From positions 248,001 to 312,000 of IMG/VR virus record IMGVR_UViG_3300049793_000366: DNA of 64,000 nt; one strand, given 5' to 3'. Shown piece by piece: positions 3,656 to 48,127 of this stretch (position 1 is its first letter; every line of letters begins with the position of its first letter). The notes beneath the pieces were generated by a model, which saw nothing but the letters and a program-made list of their open reading frames with translations, ran no database searches and was not told the DNA's origin. A program made the position numbers and the translations under genes.

Positions 3656-3902
3656 CTACGACTTTTTTAATTAATTCATCGCGCTTATCACTCTTATAAG
3701 TTTTTTCATCATAAACTTCAATAATGAATCCATCTATTGTGAATTCACTAGCCCAGCAATCCCAGGTTTTATATTGTGGATGCTCGTTGAGTGCCAATTT
3801 CTTGGCTTTGTCTTCACTTTCTGCTACATAAGTAAATGATGGTAATGATTGGTGCCACCCGCCATCATTAAATGTAACTTTCCAAATTTTCAGTGCGCTC
3901 AT
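3648..3902 (-). CDS. Hypothetical protein with C-terminal R-tag (KRDELIKKVV)
   Basis: Overlapping operon ORF; shared motif. Confidence 0.7.
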   Translation of the reverse strand: MSALKIWKVTFNDGGWHQSLPSFTYVAESEDKAKKLALNEHPQYKTWDCWASEFTIDGFIIEVYDEKTYKSDKRDELIKKVVDE

Positions 3903-4303
3903 GTTATTATATTTAGAATCTTGTTATCTCTTAAATCCGTATATCCCTTAAAGCAGAATAGGTCTATTCTAATGATAACCTGTGAAAATCCATAATACAA
4001 GCTATCGACTATTCTCTGTACTGGTACACTCGTTGTTCCGTTCTTTCTCGTAATGGGACCAGATATTATCTCTAAGTAACAATTGAGTTCATCTGTCCAA
4101 TCTCCAACTTCATCTATCTCGTATTTGTGAAAAGGTTTAAGTTTGCTGTATGCGTTCTTAAAGTTTTCTCTATCTTCTTCGTCATTGAATCTATTGATGT
4201 GATACTCTGTGAACCACTTATCTATAAATTCGATATCATTTATCTTTTCATTGAAGATGATGTATTTACCGTCAAATATGTAATCATTCGGATTAATCAC
4301 CAT
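3899..4303 (-). CDS. Hypothetical protein with C-terminal R-tag (LRDNKILNII)
   Basis: Overlapping operon ORF; shared motif. Confidence 0.7.
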   Translation of the reverse strand: MVINPNDYIFDGKYIIFNEKINDIEFIDKWFTEYHINRFNDEEDRENFKNAYSKLKPFHKYEIDEVGDWTDELNCYLEIISGPITRKNGTTSVPVQRIVDSLYYGFSQVIIRIDLFCFKGYTDLRDNKILNIIT

Positions 4304-4685
4304 CTTCTTTATTTAAAATATCACCAAGTCTTTTATCTCTCATGTATTGATTGGCATTGTTAAACCATTCAATACTTCTACTTTCTACCCAAGCTTCGTT
4401 CTTACCTTTACAGTGTATTGTAGAAAGACAATCATTCTCATTTGATGATGTATTTGGATATACCTTAACTATTCTTACTTTAGTGTGTGTACCAGCTATT
4501 TGTAGTTCTTCTACTTCGATGTAACCCTTTGAGCTATATCCACTGACGTTTATGATACCAAATCTACCAGTACCTCTTTCTTCCCATAAAGTCTTAACGA
4601 ATTGAATCTTCTGTTTAGTCATTAGACTCCAGACGATAAATCCGCCAAAGACTGCTCCGCATATGATATAAATAATTTCGGTCAT
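4293..4685 (-). CDS. Membrane-anchored hypothetical protein with C-terminal R-tag (MRDKRLGDIL)
   Basis: N-terminal hydrophobic helix; first gene after an early promoter. Confidence 0.75.
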   Translation of the reverse strand: MTEIIYIICGAVFGGFIVWSLMTKQKIQFVKTLWEERGTGRFGIINVSGYSSKGYIEVEELQIAGTHTKVRIVKVYPNTSSNENDCLSTIHCKGKNEAWVESRSIEWFNNANQYMRDKRLGDILNKEDGD

Positions 4686-6058: not shown

Positions 6059-6250
6059 TTAACCTAATAAATCATCTATTTTAGAGTCACGTTTCATCAT
6101 TTTTTCAATCATTTGGTATTCCTTGATTAGTCTGGTTTCTTCCGCTGCATAGTCTATGTATTTGAAGTTTTTTAAATCTTCAATCATCTCCGGTGTCCAT
6201 ACTGCGTTGACTTTAAAGGTACCAACCATACCATTCTCATCGACACTCAT
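6059..6250 (-). CDS. Small protein: gp23-like major capsid fragment plus C-terminal R-tag
   Basis: KVNAVWTPEMIEDL...ID.AAE resembles the gp23-family KLKA.WT/S.ELAQDL...DAEAEL segment; ends KRDSKIDDLLG. Confidence 0.65.
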   Translation of the reverse strand: MSVDENGMVGTFKVNAVWTPEMIEDLKNFKYIDYAAEETRLIKEYQMIEKMMKRDSKIDDLLG

Positions 6251-23116: not shown

Positions 23117-23314
23117 TTATTCTTCTTTTAATAATTCGTCTATTTTAGTTTCTCTGTTTGACATTTTAATTCTGCTTATCAATTCATCAGATGTACTATT
23201 TAGATATTCTGTATATGAGATGCTTTTATCCAACTCTTTTGCTATATACTCAGAATAGTCAATTTGTGCATTTAATGCTTCCATAACATATTCTTGGTAG
23301 CTAATTGTGTTCAT
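23117..23314 (-). CDS. Small protein with 14-aa YxEY repeats and C-terminal R-tag (NRETKIDELL)
   Basis: ISYQEYV / IDYSEYI / ISYTEYL. Confidence 0.7.
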   Translation of the reverse strand: MNTISYQEYVMEALNAQIDYSEYIAKELDKSISYTEYLNSTSDELISRIKMSNRETKIDELLKEE

Positions 23315-26855: not shown

Positions 26856-28301
26856 TTATAGTCCACCGAATATATCCATAATCACGGTCAATCTTGATGT
26901 TATCTCAGGCATACCTAATGGATCAATAATTGAATTGATAGGTGATAAGATACATTTAAAAAATTGTGTGTCGTAATCAATTTCTGGAGCATACTCTACT
27001 GGATGCGATCCTCTTATGTATGCGAATACGTTATTGTCACCCTTACAATAGTAATATTTAATCTTAGTACCAGATTTGATAAATGTGTATTTATCTTGAT
27101 ACTTTTGATTCTTATATAGTAAGTGATTATATAACGCCGCTGCTTTTACTGCAAAGTGCGCTCCACTCACGAATTCTAGTTTCTCTTTATCATCAAGAAC
27201 TTTCTCGTTGTAGTTAGAACATGATGACTGCATTGCTATCTCATCGATATCTGCTAATTCAAATTCTTTACGTAAGCCTTTTACTAACTTTAATAATTCT
27301 TTGATGTTGAATGATTCTGGATTTGTAAATAAATATTTTACAATATCTACAATCTTCTCCCTTGCGAAAGCTGGTGTTGATGAACGTACAAGCTCTACAC
27401 CTTTTGGATATAAGTACTTGAAACGTTCGTGTGGAATACCATCCTCCCAAGATACGTGTTGTATGTATTTCTTCTTAGCGATGTTTATAATAGACTCTGA
27501 TACACGCTCTAACTCGAAATCTTCCTTATTGTCTACACCGAATGAACCAGCGTATTCTTCTAATGAATCTCTAAAGAATTGTGCTATTCTGAATTTATCA
27601 ACAGCGTGTACAAAATCTAACTCTCTGAAAAAGTTAGGGATAATCTTAGTAGTAACATCTTTTAAATCCTTACTACCAACAAAGTAGCCATCAATAACTA
27701 ATGTTTCTATATTATTATCAGCTATAACATTTTTAATGTTTTTTAAGCCACCTATACCAAAGTTATCATACTCTGCTATGTAACCAATGAAACTTGGATT
27801 ATCAATTTCAATATCAATTTCATTTCTAAGTAATATTGCAAATGGTTTATCGATAGTTGATAAGAACTCATCATTGATTACTTGATTTTTCCAATCACAT
27901 CTTTTTATAGCTGGACCAAATCCAACAAACACTGAGTCGGTATCAGCGTAGATACTAACTTCTAAATCGCCTGGTTTTTCTGGGTCTATTGGTGTTAATG
28001 GTTTTACATTTTTAATATAAAGCATATTATGTAAATCAGTATCAAGATGCCATTGATTCCACCAATAATCTTGAGTTTTCTTAGACATGGTTTTAGTTAA
28101 ATCACGTCCTTGTGCTGTTATCGTACCAGCTACTTGGTTATTGAATAATATGAAGTGTTGATTAGCGAAGGCTCCATATGAACCATTTAGTACGAGTTTA
28201 AGAGCTAATTGCAAGGCATTATAATAATCCACTTCTTTTTTAAGTGTATTAGCCTTGTTTTTAAGTTCTTCTATTTTATTTATCTTTTCCGTCCTTGTCA
28301 T
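26856..28301 (-). CDS. Family B DNA polymerase, C-terminal subunit (split gp43B-like)
   Basis: KLVLNGSYG (motif B), YADTDS (motif C), AKKKY, KGVE..RSSTP; no exonuclease or motif A. Confidence 0.9.
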   Translation of the reverse strand: MTRTEKINKIEELKNKANTLKKEVDYYNALQLALKLVLNGSYGAFANQHFILFNNQVAGTITAQGRDLTKTMSKKTQDYWWNQWHLDTDLHNMLYIKNVKPLTPIDPEKPGDLEVSIYADTDSVFVGFGPAIKRCDWKNQVINDEFLSTIDKPFAILLRNEIDIEIDNPSFIGYIAEYDNFGIGGLKNIKNVIADNNIETLVIDGYFVGSKDLKDVTTKIIPNFFRELDFVHAVDKFRIAQFFRDSLEEYAGSFGVDNKEDFELERVSESIINIAKKKYIQHVSWEDGIPHERFKYLYPKGVELVRSSTPAFAREKIVDIVKYLFTNPESFNIKELLKLVKGLRKEFELADIDEIAMQSSCSNYNEKVLDDKEKLEFVSGAHFAVKAAALYNHLLYKNQKYQDKYTFIKSGTKIKYYYCKGDNNVFAYIRGSHPVEYAPEIDYDTQFFKCILSPINSIIDPLGMPEITSRLTVIMDIFGGL

Positions 28302-28341: not shown

Positions 28342-29292
28342 TTATGATACTAATTTTTCCAAATTATTTATCCGCTTCCATTCTTTAGTTCCCATAAATA
28401 TTAGCTCATATTCTTGTAGAAAAGCTGCATAACTACCCATAACTTTTATGGCATCTTCTGCCCATTTGGAATCTCTGTTTGGTACTAAGTGATATGGAAT
28501 CCATTGTTTGACGTATATGTTTTTATCATCATAAACAAGGTCTTTGAAATGATTCTCACCATTAGGAGTACCGAGTATTGTTATCTTAGTGTTTTTTCGC
28601 GCTATTGCTGTTAGTTGATATACTTGACTGAATCTTCTTACAGCAGTAGGTGATAAGTGACCATAACCATCTACAATAGTAAAATCATAAGTCATACCCA
28701 AAGTTGAACCAGCACTGCCGTAGAATGTTCCTATTTTAATACATGAGCCATTATCGAATACTATTCTACTATTTGACATACTGAGTATACCAAGTTTAGC
28801 ATAGTAAGGTAAATTCTCATATAGAATTTTAATTTTTTCTAAAATTCTTTTAGCACCATCTATTTTATTATCCGTTATAAGTATTTTCTTATCATCCTGA
28901 TATGCATAGTGTAAAGCTTGTAATGCCAATATCAATGTCATTCCACTTTGTCTGGAATTGATTATAGTGTTAAACCTATTTGATTTGTAATTTTGTAAGG
29001 CTTGTGCTTGATATGGACGAAGTGAGACTGATGCGTAGCCTAAGTTACCAGTTAATGTTTTTGTAAGAGATAATAAATACTCAGGATCATCTTGTATTTT
29101 AAGTTTAGATGCTATTTCTTCTTCTGTGTAGTCGAATATAATACCAGATGCGCGATGTGCCTCATTTCTCCTATAATATGGTTGTGTGCGTGGGTATTCT
29201 GGTTCAATACCTAATAAACCTCCTAATTTCTTATCTCGGTTCTTTTGTTTCTCACTTCTACATTCTAATAATTCTGTTGACCAATTACTCAT
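28342..29292 (-). CDS. Degenerate terminase large-subunit ATPase domain (gp17-like) with R-tags at both ends
   Basis: LRPYQ, SRQSGMT (K>M), IVDGY (DE>DG), GTPNGENHF, FLQEYEL; no nuclease domain. Confidence 0.8.
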   Translation of the reverse strand: MSNWSTELLECRSEKQKNRDKKLGGLLGIEPEYPRTQPYYRRNEAHRASGIIFDYTEEEIASKLKIQDDPEYLLSLTKTLTGNLGYASVSLRPYQAQALQNYKSNRFNTIINSRQSGMTLILALQALHYAYQDDKKILITDNKIDGAKRILEKIKILYENLPYYAKLGILSMSNSRIVFDNGSCIKIGTFYGSAGSTLGMTYDFTIVDGYGHLSPTAVRRFSQVYQLTAIARKNTKITILGTPNGENHFKDLVYDDKNIYVKQWIPYHLVPNRDSKWAEDAIKVMGSYAAFLQEYELIFMGTKEWKRINNLEKLVS

Positions 29293-29854
29293 TTATAAAA
29301 TCGCGTACTATTTTCTCTGCTTCAAGCAGTGCAATATCTAAATCACGATTTAGTATTTGATAGTCGAACTTATCTGCTGTTTTTAGTTCAGTTTCCGCTT
29401 TATCTAAGCGTCTTTCTATACTCTCAGGTGTTTCGGTTCGTCTTAACTTCAATCGTTCTTCTAAGTCTTTAATAGAGGGTGGTAATACTATTATTGATAT
29501 GGCTTTATCACCAAATTGCTTTTTAAGATTTAAAGCACCAATAACATCCATATCAAATATCACATCTTTACCATTTTCCCATATTCTATTCACTTCTGAC
29601 TTTAATGTACCATAGAAATTATTGGTATATACCTCTTCCCATTCAACAAATTCTTCTTTTTCAATTTTATTTTTGAACTCATCAATTGATAGAAAATGGT
29701 AGTCTTTACCATCGATTTCGCCCCTTCTTATTGGGCGACTCGTTGCTGATATAGAAAATGATATTTCATTACTTAAAATACTCAGCAAATGCTTTACTAT
29801 CGTGGTTTTACCAGCTCCAGATGGTGCCGCAAATATTATTAATTTACCCTTCAT
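29285..29854 (-). CDS. gmk: Guanylate kinase
   Basis: APSGAGKTT, SATSRPIR.GE.DG.DYHF, YGT, DMDVIGA. Confidence 0.95.
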   Translation of the reverse strand: MKGKLIIFAAPSGAGKTTIVKHLLSILSNEISFSISATSRPIRRGEIDGKDYHFLSIDEFKNKIEKEEFVEWEEVYTNNFYGTLKSEVNRIWENGKDVIFDMDVIGALNLKKQFGDKAISIIVLPPSIKDLEERLKLRRTETPESIERRLDKAETELKTADKFDYQILNRDLDIALLEAEKIVRDFINE

Positions 29855-29874
29855 AGACTTAATTACTTTAGAAC

Positions 29875-29909
29875 TTATATTCATAAAGAGATGATTGTTT
29901 CAATATATA
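29875..29909. promoter_or_regulatory. Back-to-back middle (minus, AAAC-N15-AATATAA) and late (plus, AATATATA) promoters
   Basis: Motifs at 29875-29900 and 29902-29909. Confidence 0.6.
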
Positions 29910-29913
29910 CTAC

Positions 29914-30390
29914 ATGATTAATTTTTTAAAAATGTTGAAGTTGATTCTCAGGTCTAAAATAAATCATTTCATATCTATTGATTCTGCTACTTACTTTAAG
30001 TGGCGTTATTTGATACAGATATTAATAAGACTAAATAAGAACTACGTAGCGTGTGAGGTATTCAGAACGCGATACAAGGGACTAAGGAATATTGTGATTA
30101 TTGGTTTAAAGTGGAATGGTAAGAATGTAAAGAGAAGAACAAATGGGTACGCAAAGCAGTGGATATTAAGACATAAGAAGTATAACTGCCCTTATTGTGA
30201 ACAAAAGCTAACACCAGTTAATGCTACTAGTGACCATATTGTACCAATATCAGTTGGTGGTAATAATTGTCAAGTAAATATAATAGTTTGTTGTAAAGAT
30301 TGTAATGGTGAGAGAGGTGATAGAGAATTCTATTCCTACTTAAGATATAAGAATAAAAAATATGCGAATATTAAATTCCCATTTTTATAA
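29914..30390 (+). CDS. HNH endonuclease
   Basis: CPYC...DHIVP.S.GG.N...N...CKDCN. Confidence 0.9.
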   Translation: MINFLKMLKLILRSKINHFISIDSATYFKWRYLIQILIRLNKNYVACEVFRTRYKGLRNIVIIGLKWNGKNVKRRTNGYAKQWILRHKKYNCPYCEQKLTPVNATSDHIVPISVGGNNCQVNIIVCCKDCNGERGDREFYSYLRYKNKKYANIKFPFL

Positions 30391-31087
30391 GTGCTAACTC
30401 TCTTGATACGCTTTTCATCTCATTATATTGCTCTTCGTTTACGATGACACTAAGCTCTTTCAATTTACCAACTTCGTGTAGATTGTAACCACCTCTTATT
30501 TCAACCTTGTCATCCGTTACTGATGCGTCAACAACTGATAATTCAAGTATTGATGATTTTTTACCGAATAAAATTCGAGTATCGAAATAATTTATATATG
30601 GGTCAACATAGAGTGGTATATTATTCCATCTACCGACTACATCTATTATACCAGCACTACCATTTCTAATTCTTGCATCTGGTGTGTAATACATTGAATC
30701 TTGTAGATATGAACCAATTTGTGCATTTGTTATAATAAAATCAGCTTCTCTGGTTTCATACGCTAACCTTATATCTAAATCTCTAAGTATATCTTTATAT
30801 TCAAATGATATAACGCCATTTATATGACTAAATACAAATCCTGCTTTTTCAGCACTGTCATAAATTGTTTGACATAGTTTCCTTTGAATTTGTGTGATGT
30901 ATTGTTCTATTATAGCAGTAGTAAATCGTCCTTCACCAACTGAATCGAATGCTGGGTCGTTTCTATTTATAGCTATGCTAATACCAATCTCTTCTGATAG
31001 TGTATTTACTTTTGGTGTAGACCAATTAAATATTTCTATTATCTTTAACTTGTTTATTAAATTTGCTGTTATATTTTCTTTTAGCAT
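30371..31087 (-). CDS. Truncated gp23-like major capsid paralog with degenerate R-tag (start uncertain)
   Basis: ADFIITNAQIGSYL...VGRWNNIPLYVDPY...ILFGKK resembles the gp23 C-terminal half; ends SRELALIKMGI. Confidence 0.6.
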   Translation of the reverse strand: MLKENITANLINKLKIIEIFNWSTPKVNTLSEEIGISIAINRNDPAFDSVGEGRFTTAIIEQYITQIQRKLCQTIYDSAEKAGFVFSHINGVISFEYKDILRDLDIRLAYETREADFIITNAQIGSYLQDSMYYTPDARIRNGSAGIIDVVGRWNNIPLYVDPYINYFDTRILFGKKSSILELSVVDASVTDDKVEIRGGYNLHEVGKLKELSVIVNEEQYNEMKSVSRELALIKMGI

Positions 31088-32234
31088 CCGGATTGTACTC
31101 TTTTTTTTGCTTAGGGATCCACACCGCATCGTATTGGTCTCTAGAGAAAAACTTTGGTAAGTCTAACTTCTTATATGGGTCACCACCTGTAAGCTGTGCT
31201 AACTTATTTAAATCTTTTATAGCTGATATCCTTTGTAAGTAAGTAAATGGGTCTGATGGCTTTTTCTTCTCTATTAAATTATCAAACAATTTCTTCCAAA
31301 GAAATACAGAGAAGCCTTCTTTTAATTTCATTGCTGAGTTCTTATGTCCTGTACCATCATTATCAAAGAAATATTGCATATCGAGATTGGCTTCTATGAA
31401 TCTCATGTCAGTATTAACACCAACAACACCAATAGAATTAGGATAGAACAATGAGTCGAGATATCCTTCGAATACTGTTACTTTTTCCATAACATCGATA
31501 TTTAAAATACCAAAATAATAAGATAGCTTATTATATAGTACCAATTCGTTTAAGTCAAAGTCTGCTAATTTTTCCTCACCATATAACCATTTGTATAAAC
31601 TCTCATAATTATAGATTTTGAAAAATCTGGCTCTACCATCTTTCATATTTCTAATCTGCATCCCTAATACTTTACCACCTCTTCTATTCAGAAGACATAT
31701 AATACCTTCTTTTGATTCAGCATTTCTCCAATAGTTACCTTCATAAATATTACTAATTACATCTTCTGGTATACCTCGTTTTGTAACCAGGTAGTGATAT
31801 GTTGGTGAACCTTTTTCTACTGGTTTAAAATCTGTTATTGGTGTTTCGTATGTATTGAATAGCTTAGTCAATTCTTCCAAAGAAAGAAGTTTACTCATCT
31901 GTGTCTCAACCGCATTGTCCTCGAAGTCTGAATAAGTTACATTACTTGCTATGTGTTCTATGATTTCCAATTTAACACCAGGGTCCAATTGTTGATTGAA
32001 ATCTCGACACATCTTATCAAACGATGTTCTGTGGTCACAGTTAAAGCAAACGAATATTAATTTATTCCACCATATATTTCCTCTCTTGGCATTTCGGTCA
32101 GTAGAAGAGTCACCACAATATGGACAAGCAAAATTCATCCTATCGTGGTAGTCATATATACGTCTCTTCTCAACCAATTTAAATTGGGTGTTAAGTATGT
32201 CTTGAAGACTATTTTTTATATATGATTTGTCCAT
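31026..32234 (-). CDS. gp61: DNA primase (gp61-like)
   Basis: CPYCGDS...CFNC zinc domain; Toprim FEGYLDS, FFDND. Confidence 0.9.
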   Translation of the reverse strand: MDKSYIKNSLQDILNTQFKLVEKRRIYDYHDRMNFACPYCGDSSTDRNAKRGNIWWNKLIFVCFNCDHRTSFDKMCRDFNQQLDPGVKLEIIEHIASNVTYSDFEDNAVETQMSKLLSLEELTKLFNTYETPITDFKPVEKGSPTYHYLVTKRGIPEDVISNIYEGNYWRNAESKEGIICLLNRRGGKVLGMQIRNMKDGRARFFKIYNYESLYKWLYGEEKLADFDLNELVLYNKLSYYFGILNIDVMEKVTVFEGYLDSLFYPNSIGVVGVNTDMRFIEANLDMQYFFDNDGTGHKNSAMKLKEGFSVFLWKKLFDNLIEKKKPSDPFTYLQRISAIKDLNKLAQLTGGDPYKKLDLPKFFSRDQYDAVWIPKQKKEYNPDAKRKYNSKFNKQVKDNRNI

Positions 32235-44626: not shown

Positions 44627-45363
44627 GAGCATTATTAGAAAAAAACGAACTTAAAGAATGGATTGATGATTTCGTTTATATGTCGAAGTCTAAATTTATG
44701 GATTTGGGTGTAGAAGTTATTGCTTTCAATGGTGATAACTTAAAAACACTCGAAGCTTTAAACCCATCAAAGAATGATATTCTAATTGGTTCTGTTGAAG
44801 CAACCGAAAGGTTTTTCAATCTGATTGGTGTACCTGTTCCGAATTATATCGGTTATCCTGAGTCTTTAAAGAAATATCTACACCGCAATATTGAAACTAT
44901 GAAGTTCAGTGAACTTGATGGTAAAACATTTCCTTATTTCGTTAAACCGAAGAACGGTGTTAAAGCATTTACTGGCTCACTTGTTCAGAATGAAACACAG
45001 AAGAGTTTTCTTGTTAGTTTCGATAATGTTATTAGTGATACTGAGTTATACGTTAGTGATCCTATCAATTTCATTACTGAATACAGATGCTTTGTGCATA
45101 AGAAAGAACTGAAGGGTATTCAGTATTATTTGGGTGACTTTAAAAAGTTTCCAAGCATAGAAACAATTGAATCTATGATACGCGACTATGATAACTGTAA
45201 TGTATCATATACGCTTGATGTTGGTGTGCTTGAGAACGGTGAAACTGCTTTGGTTGAAGTCAATGATATGTGGGCTATTGGTTCATATGGGTTTGATGCT
45301 AAAACATATGTGAGAATGAGCATTGATAGGTTTGTGGAGATTTATGCTAAAGCCAAAGTATAA
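44623..45363 (+). CDS. ATP-grasp domain protein (DUF4343/R2K-like)
   Basis: FVKP...K.FTG, EYRCFV, YTLDVG, LVEVND. Confidence 0.8.
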   Translation: MRALLEKNELKEWIDDFVYMSKSKFMDLGVEVIAFNGDNLKTLEALNPSKNDILIGSVEATERFFNLIGVPVPNYIGYPESLKKYLHRNIETMKFSELDGKTFPYFVKPKNGVKAFTGSLVQNETQKSFLVSFDNVISDTELYVSDPINFITEYRCFVHKKELKGIQYYLGDFKKFPSIETIESMIRDYDNCNVSYTLDVGVLENGETALVEVNDMWAIGSYGFDAKTYVRMSIDRFVEIYAKAKV

Positions 45364-45661
45364 TATAGGCGACTTCATTGTTAATGACTCTGATGATTGG
45401 GCATCATTCTATCCACACTGTCAGAGATTCAGACAAATAGGACATATCGGTGTTATAATAGATAGAAAAGTAGAAACTAATCCTTTATGTCCACTATATG
45501 GTACTTGGGGTTATTTAATTGCTTTTAATGTTGGTGTGTATTGTAGCAAAGCAGAAAATCAAATTAGAAGAGATAATAGGATTTTAGAATCAAGTAAAAT
45601 AAAACTCGAAGCTATTAAATTAATAGAATTGAGAGAGATAAAATTGAATGAATTATTATGA
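45344..45661 (+). CDS. Small SH3/KOW-like protein with C-terminal R-tag (LREIKLNELL)
   Basis: KYNIGDFI; motif. Confidence 0.65.
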   Translation: MLKPKYNIGDFIVNDSDDWASFYPHCQRFRQIGHIGVIIDRKVETNPLCPLYGTWGYLIAFNVGVYCSKAENQIRRDNRILESSKIKLEAIKLIELREIKLNELL

Positions 45662-46744: not shown

Positions 46745-47792
46745 ACAATTAAAGCTTGAAATACCTGATGATAGCATAAGACAAACATATCTTATGATGT
46801 TACTATCAAAATCATCCGGTAGTGATTCATTTAAAGGTGTTACTGATTCAGTATTGTTATCAATGGAAGATATGTTCAAAGATAAAGATGGTATATTCAA
46901 TGATATGTATAATGATATACTAAGAGAAAAGCAATCACGTAGAAATAATAAGTTAGAAAGTCTAAATTTAAAGAGTATGAAAAGATTTGAATTCAACGCA
47001 AACAATATGGTTGATGCTTCTCATTATATTTATAACCGAGCTATTCAGTTATTGAAATATGGTGTTAAACTAAAGTCTATGGACGAAGTTGGCTTCGGTG
47101 TTGATGCTACATTCATCTATAATGGTGAAGAATATCATGGTATATACATACTCGAAGAATTCAGAGGTAAAAAGCTCTATGATTCTTATGTCAAAACAAA
47201 TGACTATAAAGTAATCACACATATCGATTGTCAGATAGAAGATTATTTGAAGAAACATAATATTGAATATGTTTGTTTAGGTGAATTTGAACAAACACCG
47301 GAGTATAAATGGATGCAAAGTATTTATGGTGATGATAGAGCTAAACGTTCTGATGTTTACTTTATGAATCATGTAGATGAAGGTCTTGCTGTATTAGAAT
47401 GGATTGGTGCCTCTGATGTTGCGAAAAGAGCATATACTCTTCATCCTATTTTTCAATCTGATGAAGACTTGAAGAATAATTACAATGCTGATTATAAGGA
47501 TATAGATGCTAAAGTAATTGTTGCTTCAATGGAATATCGTTCTGTTGCTAATGAATATTTATCAACCAGAAGCATCAATGATATATCAGAGATTAGACTA
47601 TCACCATTGAAAGATGTGAATGATATGTTAATTGCTGATAAGGTTCAGAATTACAAAGACTTCGAACAATATCACATGGGTAAACACATTCGTTCTATTG
47701 AATTGAATGAATATTTTATCAATTGGTTAATGAAATTAGGCGTAAGAATGAATTACGAAAAATGGAAAAGAGACTTACAAATAAAATTCTAA
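46722..47792 (+). CDS. Fusion of an R-tagged 85-aa module, a GNAT-like segment and a SpoT/Mesh1-like HD-fold domain
   Basis: RRNNKLESL; IYILEEFRGKKL; RAKRS..YFMNH, AYTLHP, LIADKVQN. Confidence 0.55.
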   Translation: MDTARILKQLKLEIPDDSIRQTYLMMLLSKSSGSDSFKGVTDSVLLSMEDMFKDKDGIFNDMYNDILREKQSRRNNKLESLNLKSMKRFEFNANNMVDASHYIYNRAIQLLKYGVKLKSMDEVGFGVDATFIYNGEEYHGIYILEEFRGKKLYDSYVKTNDYKVITHIDCQIEDYLKKHNIEYVCLGEFEQTPEYKWMQSIYGDDRAKRSDVYFMNHVDEGLAVLEWIGASDVAKRAYTLHPIFQSDEDLKNNYNADYKDIDAKVIVASMEYRSVANEYLSTRSINDISEIRLSPLKDVNDMLIADKVQNYKDFEQYHMGKHIRSIELNEYFINWLMKLGVRMNYEKWKRDLQIKF

Positions 47793-48127
47793 AAAAGAAT
47801 TTAGAAATACATATTTTAGAATCAGAGATTGCCTTTTCATATATGCTACGTAAGAGAGAAGCATATGAAAGAGGTTCTGATGTTGATCCATTTCAAGTAT
47901 TTACTTATAATGAAATTATAACTAAGTTAGATAGACCATTGTGTGTAATGAAGAATGCAATGCAATTGGACTTAGAAGATGATAAAAATTATAGTAATAC
48001 TTTTTCATATATCTGTATGTCAATGTCTGAGAGGGGTAATAATGAATTTAAAGCAAATGATTTTAAGAGTTATAGAGATAGTTATATAAGAGAAAATAAA
48101 ATAGAAAGCATATTAAATGATATCTGA
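47762..48127 (+). CDS. Hypothetical protein with C-terminal R-tag (IRENKIESIL)
   Basis: ORF; start uncertain. Confidence 0.65.
   Translation: MEKRLTNKILKKNLEIHILESEIAFSYMLRKREAYERGSDVDPFQVFTYNEIITKLDRPLCVMKNAMQLDLEDDKNYSNTFSYICMSMSERGNNEFKANDFKSYRDSYIRENKIESILNDI

What the first reader, a model, noticed from the sequence alone, without database searches (positions are those of the whole stretch)
28342..29292. Catalytically dead, nuclease-less terminase ATPase with a tag at each end
SEEN: the gp17-like motif order is intact (LRPYQ, SRQ.G.T, Walker B, coupling motif GTPNG, FxQEY). The Walker A Lys is Met (SRQSGMT) and the Walker B DE is DG. The ORF stops where the nuclease domain would start. 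Tags are at the N-terminus (RDKKLGGLL) and C-terminus (RINNLEKLV). It follows gmk under a middle promoter. INFERENCE: an intact frame with targeted loss of catalysis suggests a maintained pseudo-enzyme, such as a decoy for terminase-sensing immunity or a packaging regulator.
Basis: partly seen in the sequence, partly recalled or inferred. Interest (0 to 1): 0.75.

Follow-up and report, generated by a model that had tools for sequence, protein, structure and literature searches.

The report
Catalytically dead terminase-ATPase paralog, megaphage
A huge soil phage carries, beside its normal DNA-packaging enzyme, a second stand-alone copy of that enzyme's ATPase domain that has lost its catalytic residues yet is kept intact in a large undescribed family, so it probably works by binding something rather than by burning ATP.

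Summary
Window 28342-29292 (minus strand) encodes a 316-aa protein that is the whole N-terminal ATPase domain of a T4-type large terminase (TerL) and nothing else. Aligned to T4 gp17, K166 is Met, E256 is Gly and the coupling motif is altered. The adenine-binding YQ and the P-loop SRQxG are kept.

The same genome (a 508-kb virus record related to 'Mahaphage' huge phages) has a normal 723-aa TerL about 200 kb away, and no stand-alone nuclease half. The ORF is therefore a paralog, not a split terminase.

It is not a decaying copy. At least 56 clusters of short homologs all lack the Walker A lysine, while all 181 long relatives without a P-loop intein keep it. dN/dS is about 0.3, but the protein changes 3-4 times faster than its neighbours, and a close relative genome lacks it.

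The N-terminal 'tag' RDKKLGGLL is real. RDxK[IL]xx[IL]L ends 21 small proteins here and about 72 in a related phage. The C-terminal 'tag' is the ancestral hinge helix and matches the motif only loosely. The 'middle promoter' is not supported.

Best reading: a maintained pseudo-ATPase that acts as a TerL mimic. Whether its target is an immune sensor or the packaging machinery is untested.

The parts
28342..29292 (-). CDS of the 316-aa stand-alone TerL ATPase-domain paralog ('pseudo-terminase')
   Evidence: ORF; Pfam and PHROG hits; AF2 model and T4 gp17 superposition
29212..29238 (-). Residues 19-27, RDKKLGGLL. This is the N-terminal instance of the genome-wide motif RDxK[IL]xx[IL]L, inside predicted helix 14-27.
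   Evidence: The motif is conserved at this position in the short family.
29008..29022 (-). LRPYQ, the adenine-binding Q motif (T4 Y142/Q143). Retained.
28936..28956 (-). SRQSGMT, the Walker A remnant. The cis-Arg, Gln and Gly are kept; the lysine (T4 K166) is Met118.
28666..28683 (-). FTIVDG, the Walker B remnant. Asp208 is kept; the catalytic Glu (T4 E256) is Gly209.
28564..28581 (-). TILGTP(NG), the altered coupling motif (T4 T285-T287 become L-G-T)
28348..28386 (-). KEWKRINNLEKLV, the C-terminal helix (303-315). It is homologous to the hinge helix that follows the ATPase domain in full-length TerLs, and is a family-specific conserved block (GTKEWxRxxNLxKL).
29285..29884 (-). Guanylate kinase gene directly upstream. 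Its stop overlaps the paralog's start by 8 nt.
26856..28301 (-). C-terminal half of a split family-B DNA polymerase, 40 nt downstream. This adjacency is kept in three related genomes.
29914..30390 (+). HNH endonuclease gene, divergent from gmk. It is a conserved syntenic neighbour (77-89% identity in relatives).

Best explanation
The ORF encodes a maintained, non-catalytic paralog of the large-terminase ATPase domain: a pseudo-ATPase. It keeps the complete gp17-type N-domain fold (Rossmann subdomain I plus subdomain II), the adenine-binding YQ and the P-loop backbone with its cis-arginine. It has lost the residues needed to bind Mg-ATP productively and to hydrolyse it (Walker A Lys, catalytic Glu, coupling Thr), and it has no nuclease domain. 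It therefore cannot package or cut DNA.

I infer that it works stoichiometrically, as a molecular mimic of TerL that occupies surfaces made to recognise the TerL ATPase domain. Two target classes are possible. (a) Host immune sensors that use TerL as their trigger (Avs1-3, Upx). A look-alike without the ATP-loaded active site could bind them without activating them. (b) The phage's own packaging partners (portal clip, small terminase, the TerL ring). There it would act as a brake.

I favour (a) slightly, roughly 30% against 25%. The gene is accessory within its clade. It evolves 3-4 times faster than its neighbours. It sits among replication and nucleotide-metabolism genes rather than late genes.

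Its N-terminal RDxK[IL]xx[IL]L motif links it to the same unknown partner as dozens of small phage proteins.

Shown: homology, fold, loss of catalytic residues, family-wide conservation of that loss, purifying but relaxed selection, paralogy with an intact TerL, and motif sharing. Inferred: absence of ATPase activity, mode of action by binding, and the identity of the partners.
For: Homology and fold: (Z 28.5 to T4 gp17 residues 67-361).

Catalytic losses mapped on T4 numbering. In T4, even conservative changes in these signatures abolish packaging (PMC9958956, section 4.2.1).

The loss is a family trait. Among the 150 best representatives of a profile search, 56 of 70 proteins of 420 aa or less lack the lysine (M19, I13, S8, L5, V3 and others), and only 7 of those 56 keep DE. 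All 75 long proteins scored with an uninterrupted P-loop have GK[ST], and 72 of them have DE. A second search added 106 long proteins, all with K, and 2 short ones without it.

In a column-by-column comparison, only the Walker A K/T, the Walker B D, the catalytic E, the coupling T and a few others are lost. YQ, RQxG, PNG and the block R273-F299 are kept.

The K-less short forms group apart from canonical TerLs in a tree, and the genome's own TerL sits in the canonical clade.

An intact 723-aa TerL (SRQVGKT, MDEF, TSTPNG, nuclease domain) is present in the same genome.

Selection: dN is 0.34-0.54 against 0.08-0.16 for polB-C, HNH and primase. dN/dS is about 0.3 with dS saturated.

Accessory status: the gene is absent from the related 635-kb phage LR745206 and degenerate in LR756504.

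Precedents: ATPase-dead gp17 subunits still bind heads and depress packaging (PMC8589836). T4 vs.8, a stand-alone TerL-ATPase-like protein, activates Avs2. Avs2 and Avs3 read the TerL active site and its ATP, and the authors suggest that such paralogs may be anti-defence proteins (PMC13601566).

Motif sharing.
Against: No biochemical, expression or interaction data exist. Only one soil-metagenome DNA run holds the sequence.

Retention of YQ and SRQxG could mean that nucleotide is still bound, or even that some unusual catalysis survives.

If Avs-type sensors need the ATP-loaded active site, the mutant site may simply prevent binding. That would be evasion, not antagonism.

The host and its defence repertoire are unknown.

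A packaging role is weakened by the gene's absence from a close relative. An immune role has no direct support at all.

The conserved position next to the polB C-half in three genomes is not explained by either reading.

The one co-folding job gave no verdict.
Confidence: 0.55

Rival explanations
1. Packaging-motor regulator. The dead ATPase domain docks on the portal, the small terminase or the TerL ring through its retained subdomain II and ring surfaces. It slows or delays packaging, for example until replication of the very large genome is complete, or it blocks the terminases of co-infecting phages or satellites.
For: The best-conserved block shared with canonical TerLs is R273-F299 in subdomain II. 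The whole N-domain fold is kept. In T4, inactive gp17 subunits bind heads with wild-type affinity, join the pentamer and reduce packaging (PMC8589836). The TerS C-terminal domain binds the gp17 ATPase domain (PMC9958956).
Against: The gene is absent from the related 635-kb phage LR745206, which has the same TerL. It evolves 3-4 times faster than neighbouring core genes, although TerL itself is conserved. It is located with replication and nucleotide genes, 200 kb from TerL. No interaction was shown (one search gave no verdict).
Confidence: 0.25
2. Replication-linked accessory factor. The protein works with the split DNA polymerase (C-half immediately downstream), the HNH endonuclease and the nucleotide kinases, for example as a scaffold or DNA/nucleotide-binding subunit unrelated to packaging.
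For: The order HNH / (gmk) / paralog / polB C-half is kept in three genomes (own, L004, L011). There is translational overlap with gmk. The degenerate copy in LR756504 also abuts an HNH gene.
Against: The more distant family members P0005, P0006 and P0014 have no polymerase or HNH neighbours. LR745206 keeps polB-C and the HNH without the paralog. Neighbours are 77-89% identical while the paralog is 45-57% identical, which is unlike tightly co-evolving partners.
Confidence: 0.12
3. Functional split terminase. The ORF is the ATPase half, active through an unconventional site, and pairs with a separately encoded nuclease.
For: The genome does split another enzyme, polB, into two distant genes. 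An HNH nuclease gene lies next door. YQ and SRQxG are retained.
Against: The Walker A Lys, the catalytic Glu and the coupling Thr are lost, here and family-wide. A complete TerL with both domains exists. The only Terminase_6C match in the record lies inside that TerL.
Confidence: 0.03
4. Decaying remnant of a TerL duplication with no function.
For: Catalytic residues are lost and evolution is fast relative to neighbours.
Against: The frame is intact in every relative examined. dN/dS is about 0.3. The six closest members have 72 invariant positions between them, and the 56-sequence family keeps 4 invariant and 10 nearly invariant positions. A family-specific conserved C-terminal block is present. 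There are at least 56 clusters at 50% identity. The AF2 model is confident.
Confidence: 0.03

Closest known systems
T4 gp17 N-terminal ATPase domain (TerL, Pfam Terminase_6N; PDB 2O0H, 2O0J, 3CPE)
   Same: Same fold over nearly the whole protein: model residues 5-304 match gp17 residues 67-361 at Z 28.5. Same motif order. The adenine-binding YQ, the SRQxG P-loop with the cis-arginine, PNG and the subdomain II block are all retained.
   Different: The Walker A Lys is Met and the catalytic Glu is Gly. The coupling motif is altered. There is no nuclease domain. It is a second copy beside a complete TerL, and it carries an N-terminal RDxK[IL]xx[IL]L motif that the canonical TerLs of these phages lack.
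T4 vs.8, an uncharacterised stand-alone TerL-ATPase-like protein that activates EcAvs2 (PMC13601566)
   Same: A phage-encoded, nuclease-less paralog of the TerL ATPase domain. It is encoded away from the packaging genes, its function is unknown, and it is restricted to certain lineages.
   Different: vs.8 has 219 aa, covers only the Rossmann core, and keeps Walker A (GRQSGKS) and Walker B (IIDE). The present family has about 300 aa, includes subdomain II, and has lost the lysine. The sequence relation is weak (hhalign E 0.007, probability 5%).
Non-catalytic paralog subunits of P-loop and RecA-type machines in general (own knowledge: clamp-loader delta/delta', F1 alpha, Rad51 paralogs)
   Same: A catalytically disabled paralog is kept under selection beside an active one.
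   Different: No evidence here that it joins the active enzyme's oligomer. The gene is accessory, not core.

Membership tests
Large terminase subunit (T4 type, Terminase_6N + Terminase_6C) | Sequence and structural homology to the TerL ATPase domain | tested here: met
   Pfam PF03237 24.1 bits (cut-off 22); phrog_5989 6e-24; Z 28.5 to gp17
Large terminase subunit (T4 type, Terminase_6N + Terminase_6C) | Walker A G-K-[ST] lysine (T4 K166) | tested here: not met
   SRQSGMT: Met118 aligns with K166. Absent in all 56 short family clusters.
Large terminase subunit (T4 type, Terminase_6N + Terminase_6C) | Walker B Asp plus catalytic Glu (T4 D255, E256) | tested here: not met
   D208 is kept and E256 is Gly209. 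DE is kept in only 7 of 56 family clusters.
Large terminase subunit (T4 type, Terminase_6N + Terminase_6C) | ATPase coupling motif (T4 T285-T287; [TS]ST in relatives) | tested here: not met
   L240-G241-T242. The Thr at the last position is 99% conserved in canonical TerLs but only 48% in the family.
Large terminase subunit (T4 type, Terminase_6N + Terminase_6C) | C-terminal RNase-H-like nuclease domain | tested here: not met
   The ORF ends at about gp17 residue 373. The only Terminase_6C match in the genome lies in the 723-aa TerL.
Large terminase subunit (T4 type, Terminase_6N + Terminase_6C) | Adenine-binding Q motif and P-loop cis-arginine | tested here: met
   Y94/Q95 and R114/Q115/G117 are conserved (at least 95% for Q95, R114, Q115 and G117; 84% for Y94) in both K-less and canonical sets.
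Pseudoenzyme (maintained catalytically inactive paralog) | Catalytic residues lost while the fold and frame are conserved under purifying selection across orthologs | tested here: met
Pseudoenzyme (maintained catalytically inactive paralog) | Lack of enzymatic activity shown experimentally | not testable with these tools
   Inferred only from T4 mutagenesis summarised in PMC9958956
T4 vs.8-like stand-alone TerL-ATPase paralogs | Conserved Walker A and B motifs; about 220 aa core only | tested here: not met
   vs.8 has GRQSGKS and IIDE. The present protein has neither K nor E and has 316 aa including subdomain II.
T4 vs.8-like stand-alone TerL-ATPase paralogs | Specific sequence relatedness to vs.8 beyond general TerL homology | tested here: inconclusive
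   hhalign E 0.007, probability 5%, 114 columns
Proteins bearing the RDxK[IL]xx[IL]L terminal motif of Mahaphage-like phages | Match to the motif near a terminus | tested here: met
   Residues 19-27, RDKKLGGLL. 22 genome hits against 0.1 expected.
Proteins bearing the RDxK[IL]xx[IL]L terminal motif of Mahaphage-like phages | Second instance at the C-terminus | tested here: inconclusive
   RINNLEKLV lacks D2 and K4 and scores low. Ortholog P0014 has a perfect RDAKIDRII at its C-terminus.
Decoy or antagonist of terminase-sensing immunity (Avs1-3, Upx) | Binds the sensor and alters its activation | not testable with these tools
   Host and sensors are unknown, and Avs proteins exceed the size limit of the co-folding tool.

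The most novel reading that the evidence does not exclude
Mahaphage-like huge phages may use a short terminal peptide, RDxK[IL]xx[IL]L, as a sorting or docking signal. About 45 proteins in this genome and 72 or more in LR745206 carry it. The lysine-less terminase paralog would be a client or adaptor in that system. On this reading it is a TerL look-alike, made before packaging starts, that is delivered to a common hub. The hub could be the capsid interior (as with encapsulin cargo peptides), a protease, or a host target. There the paralog would blunt terminase-sensing immunity without triggering it, because the ATP-loaded active site that Avs2 and Avs3 read has been erased.
Probability: 0.12. 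Interest if true: 0.9.

Novelty: new variant of a known kind. Interest (0 to 1): 0.66.

Why it matters
TerL is the most conserved protein of tailed phages and a main 'pattern' read by bacterial innate immunity. This work shows a large, previously unnoted family of stand-alone TerL ATPase domains. There are at least 56 clusters at 50% identity among the best hits alone, and all have erased the same catalytic lysine.

The family gives a natural set of pseudo-terminases for three questions:
- What does the terminase fold do besides hydrolysing ATP?
- Do phages make non-activating mimics of their own immune triggers?
- Can packaging motors be regulated by dead subunits?

The shared terminal motif on dozens of small 'dark matter' proteins of the largest known phages is a concrete handle on their function. 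One receptor could explain many orphan genes.

Tried and rejected
1. Co-folding of the TerL N-domain (residues 1-445), the paralog and a 63-aa motif-bearing protein gave 'no answer' (score 0.01). It is evidence neither for nor against binding.
2. Promoter claim: sigma-70-like and MotA-box-like scans are at chance level, and no MotA box lies upstream of gmk.
3. Expression: only one soil-metagenome DNA run holds the region and no RNA run does.
4. Sliding clamp as the motif's receptor: no gp45-type clamp was found by PF09116 or PF02916 in the record. The polB C-half ends in a different tail (…VIMDIFGGL).
5. Pfam and PHROG scans of 13 different motif-bearing proteins, and of the putative small-terminase neighbour of TerL, found nothing apart from one sub-threshold PolyA_pol hit (E 0.0018, 19 bits, cut-off 23). 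Two internal motif hits are a UvsW-like helicase and polB-C, and are probably chance.
6. Paralog as the motif's receptor: unlikely as a general rule, because LR745206 has 72 C-terminal motif proteins and no paralog. A 310-aa LR745206 ORF with an N-terminal motif is not TerL-like.
7. Obligate HNH-paralog partnership: weakened, because LR745206 keeps the HNH without the paralog.
8. Cultured-phage relatives: tblastn with four family members returned canonical TerLs in every row shown, at 29-42% identity (PAU gp87 and the Lak and Mahaphage hits inspected are full-length TerLs). BFVD lists a few short TerL-like models (for example a 313-aa entry), but I could not retrieve them.
9. dN/dS: dS is saturated (above 1), so the ratios are rough. 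Only dN and the conclusion 'below 1' are used.
10. Literature searches found no description of lysine-less TerL paralogs.

Full report
WHAT IS THERE

Window 28342-29292 holds one intact ORF on the minus strand (316 aa, ATG start).
- It matches Pfam Terminase_6N (24.1 bits, cut-off 22) and PHROG 5989 'terminase large subunit' (6e-24).
- An AlphaFold2 model built on 56 homologs is confident (mean pLDDT 92.9, pTM 0.90).
- Its best structural matches are the T4 gp17 ATPase domain structures (Foldseek E 1e-20).
- VIA-align superposes model residues 5-304 on gp17 residues 67-361 (Z 28.5, 2.7 A).
- The protein is therefore the complete N-terminal ATPase domain of a T4-type large terminase, with Rossmann subdomain I and subdomain II, and nothing else.

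CATALYTIC MOTIFS

I aligned it directly with T4 gp17 taken from NC_000866, with the genome's own TerL and with a Mahaphage TerL. In T4 numbering:
- Kept: Y142/Q143 (adenine binding), S161, R162 (cis-arginine finger), Q163 and G165.
- K166 is Met118, and T167 is kept.
- D255 is kept, and the catalytic E256 is Gly209.
- The coupling motif T285-T287 reads L-G-T.
- F356 aligns with F299, and the ORF ends at about gp17 residue 373. This is just beyond the 1-360 ATPase domain, where the hinge to the nuclease domain begins.
- Motif coordinates were verified by translation.

[quoted passage not shown] Loss of ATPase activity is therefore a strong inference, but it has not been measured.

IT IS A PARALOG, NOT A SPLIT TERMINASE

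The window lies in a 507,910-bp IMG/VR virus record, and the protein database places the same protein on a 711,805-bp contig.
- About 200 kb away the genome encodes a 723-aa TerL with SRQVGKT, MDEF, TSTPNG and a nuclease domain.
- That TerL and its divergent neighbour gene resemble those of the 635-kb 'Mahaphage' LR745206.
- The only Terminase_6C match in the record is inside that TerL.

THE LOSS IS A FAMILY TRAIT

Five close homologs (306-318 aa, 43-65% identity) all lack the lysine (M, M, I, S, S). Their Walker B reads DD, DD, DN, ES and DE.

A profile search of 1.84 billion representatives gave 926 hits below 1e-30. Among the best 150:
- 56 of the 70 proteins of 420 aa or less lack the lysine (M19, I13, S8, L5, V3 and others).
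- Only 7 of those 56 keep DE.
- All 75 long proteins scored with an uninterrupted P-loop have GK[ST], and 72 have DE.
- Of 14 other long hits, 11 align in ways that suggest inteins or insertions in or near the P-loop. The other three (P0011, P0097, P0128; 512-612 aa) are K-less.

A second search added 106 long proteins, all with K, and two more K-less proteins of about 410 aa.

A column-by-column comparison of the 56 against the 75 shows a selective pattern:
- Lost: Walker A K and T, Walker B D, the catalytic E, the coupling T and a few neighbours.
- Retained: YQ, RQxG, PNG and the subdomain II block R273-D274-W277-G286-F291-E294-F299.

In a tree of the ATPase domain the K-less short forms group apart from canonical TerLs, and the genome's own TerL sits deep in the canonical clade. 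The paralog is therefore old, not a recent duplicate. The root of that tree is uncertain, and the search was seeded with the K-less family.

SELECTION AND DISTRIBUTION

I compared this genome with two relatives that keep the same gene order (a 709-kb NCBI contig, L004, and a 6-kb contig, L011).
- The paralog is 57% and 45% identical.
- polB-C, a primase-like gene and the HNH gene are 77-89% identical.
- dN is 0.34-0.54 against 0.08-0.16 for those neighbours.
- dN/dS is about 0.3. dS is saturated, so this is only a rough bound.
- The gene is missing from LR745206, where another gene sits upstream of polB-C.
- In LR756504 only a degenerate TerL-N-like ORF is found, next to an HNH gene.

The gene is thus intact and constrained, but fast-evolving and patchy. 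That is the profile of an accessory gene rather than a core one.

THE 'TAGS'

The N-terminal RDKKLGGLL is one instance of a striking genome-wide motif.
- RDxK[LIV]xx[LIV]L occurs 22 times, against 0.1 in shuffled proteomes.
- 21 of these lie 0-11 residues from the C-terminus of otherwise dissimilar proteins of 62-161 aa.
- A looser pattern gives 50 hits (43 C-terminal) against 1.2 expected.
- Codons vary synonymously, so the signal is in the protein.
- LR745206 has 90 hits, 72 of them C-terminal.
- Contigs carrying more distant paralogs (L005, L057) also carry such small proteins.
- Consensus from 117 instances: hydrophobic-R-[DE]-x-K-[IL]-[ND]-x-[IL]-L, then 0-2 residues.
- The motif is kept at the same N-terminal position across the closer K-less family. 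It is absent from the canonical TerLs of these phages.

The helix that carries the motif (residues 14-27) lies within the model range (5-304) that superposes on gp17, so it is probably part of the domain rather than a floppy tail.

The C-terminal RINNLEKLV is different. It aligns with the first helix after the ATPase domain of full-length TerLs. It matches the motif only at R1, L5, L8 and V9, and it scores poorly. One ortholog, P0014, nevertheless ends in a perfect RDAKIDRII. The two ends may therefore be functionally related in the family.

The receptor of the motif is unknown. Pfam and PHROG scans of motif-bearing proteins found nothing beyond one sub-threshold hit. The paralog cannot be the general receptor, because LR745206 has the motif without it.

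CONTEXT

The paralog's ATG overlaps the stop of a guanylate kinase gene by 8 nt. Forty nucleotides downstream starts the C-terminal half of a family-B DNA polymerase, whose N-terminal half lies 170 kb away.

The order HNH / (gmk) / paralog / polB-C is conserved in three genomes. It is not conserved around the more distant members.

No promoter evidence exceeds chance. No RNA data were found.

HOW IT MOST LIKELY WORKS

The fold and the partner-facing parts are kept. The catalytic residues are selectively erased, mostly to hydrophobic residues at the lysine position. I conclude that the protein is a pseudo-ATPase that acts by binding, as a mimic of the TerL ATPase domain.

Two target classes fit.

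(a) Host sensors that use TerL as a trigger.
- Published work shows that the ATPase domain alone activates EcAvs2 and Upx.
- Avs2 and Avs3 read active-site residues and the bound ATP.
- T4 encodes vs.8, a stand-alone TerL-ATPase-like protein with intact Walker motifs, which activates EcAvs2.
- The authors suggest that such proteins may be anti-defence factors (PMC13601566).
- A look-alike without the ATP-loaded site could occupy a sensor without closing it, or could simply be invisible to it.

(b) The phage's own packaging partners.
- In T4, ATPase-dead gp17 binds heads normally, joins the pentamer and slows packaging (PMC8589836).

The accessory, fast-evolving nature of the gene and its early or middle-gene neighbourhood tilt me slightly towards (a). 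Neither class is tested. A replication-linked role is a third, weaker option.

COMPARISON AND NOVELTY

The protein fails four of the six listed TerL features, so it should not be annotated as a terminase.

The nearest described thing is T4 vs.8, which differs in size, in domain content and in keeping its Walker motifs. The sequence relation is weak.

I found no description of lysine-less TerL paralogs. No close relative appeared among the top matches of four tblastn searches of sequenced phage isolates.

I rate it a new variant of a known kind: a stand-alone TerL-like paralog that here is a conserved pseudoenzyme. The terminal-motif system is an additional unexplained feature.

Noticed in passing
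Window 3899-4303(-), 4293-4685(-), 6059-6250(-), 23117-23314(-), 45344-45661(+), 47762-48127(+), and about 40 more across G000. Also LR745206 (loci L022-L055), L005 and L057.: Dozens of small, otherwise unrelated proteins with no Pfam or PHROG family match (13 were scanned) end in the same peptide, R-[DE]-x-K-[IL]-x-x-[IL]-L, followed by 0-2 residues. The strict pattern gives 22 hits against 0.1 expected, and the related 635-kb phage LR745206 has 72 C-terminal hits. A few proteins carry it near the N-terminus. It looks like a docking or sorting signal with an unknown receptor.
   Followed up: partly
Window 26856-28301(-); G000:C1 about 102,400-103,700(+): The family-B DNA polymerase is split into two genes 170 kb apart. 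The exonuclease plus motif A half is far from the finger/palm/thumb half. The C-half ends in …VIMDIFGGL, which resembles, from memory, the T4 gp43 clamp-binding tail.
   Followed up: partly
Window 29914-30390(+): The HNH endonuclease gene is 77-89% identical in relatives and is also present in LR745206. It behaves like a conserved resident gene rather than a mobile homing endonuclease.
   Followed up: partly
Window 30371-31129(-): A 252-aa ORF of unknown function evolves even faster than the paralog (41% and 28% identity where neighbours are about 80%). It overlaps the end of the primase-like gene (31026-32234) by about 100 nt, so its start may be mis-assigned.
   Followed up: no
Proteins P0039, P0059, P0085, P0087, P0090, P0118, P0143: Several long canonical TerLs of 770-1070 aa align as '…SHNT' at the Walker A site. 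This looks like inteins inserted in the P-loop.
   Followed up: no
Proteins P0028, P0161, P0226 (405-426 aa; contigs up to 134 kb): A second lysine-less subfamily (GIT, Walker B 'EE') has about 100 extra C-terminal residues ending in …SSTPLS.
   Followed up: no
L020 (LR756504.1, 635,694-636,320, at the record's end): A strongly degenerate TerL-N-like ORF (…NSEGTDM… in place of the P-loop) lies convergent with an HNH gene in a 636-kb Mahaphage. It runs off the end of the linear record.
   Followed up: partly
Whole record G000: IMG/VR labels the 507,910-bp record a 'provirus' cut from a contig of 711,805 bp. However, its TerL, gene order and motif system match free huge phages of 635-709 kb. The provirus call and its boundaries may be an artefact of trimming.
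   Followed up: no
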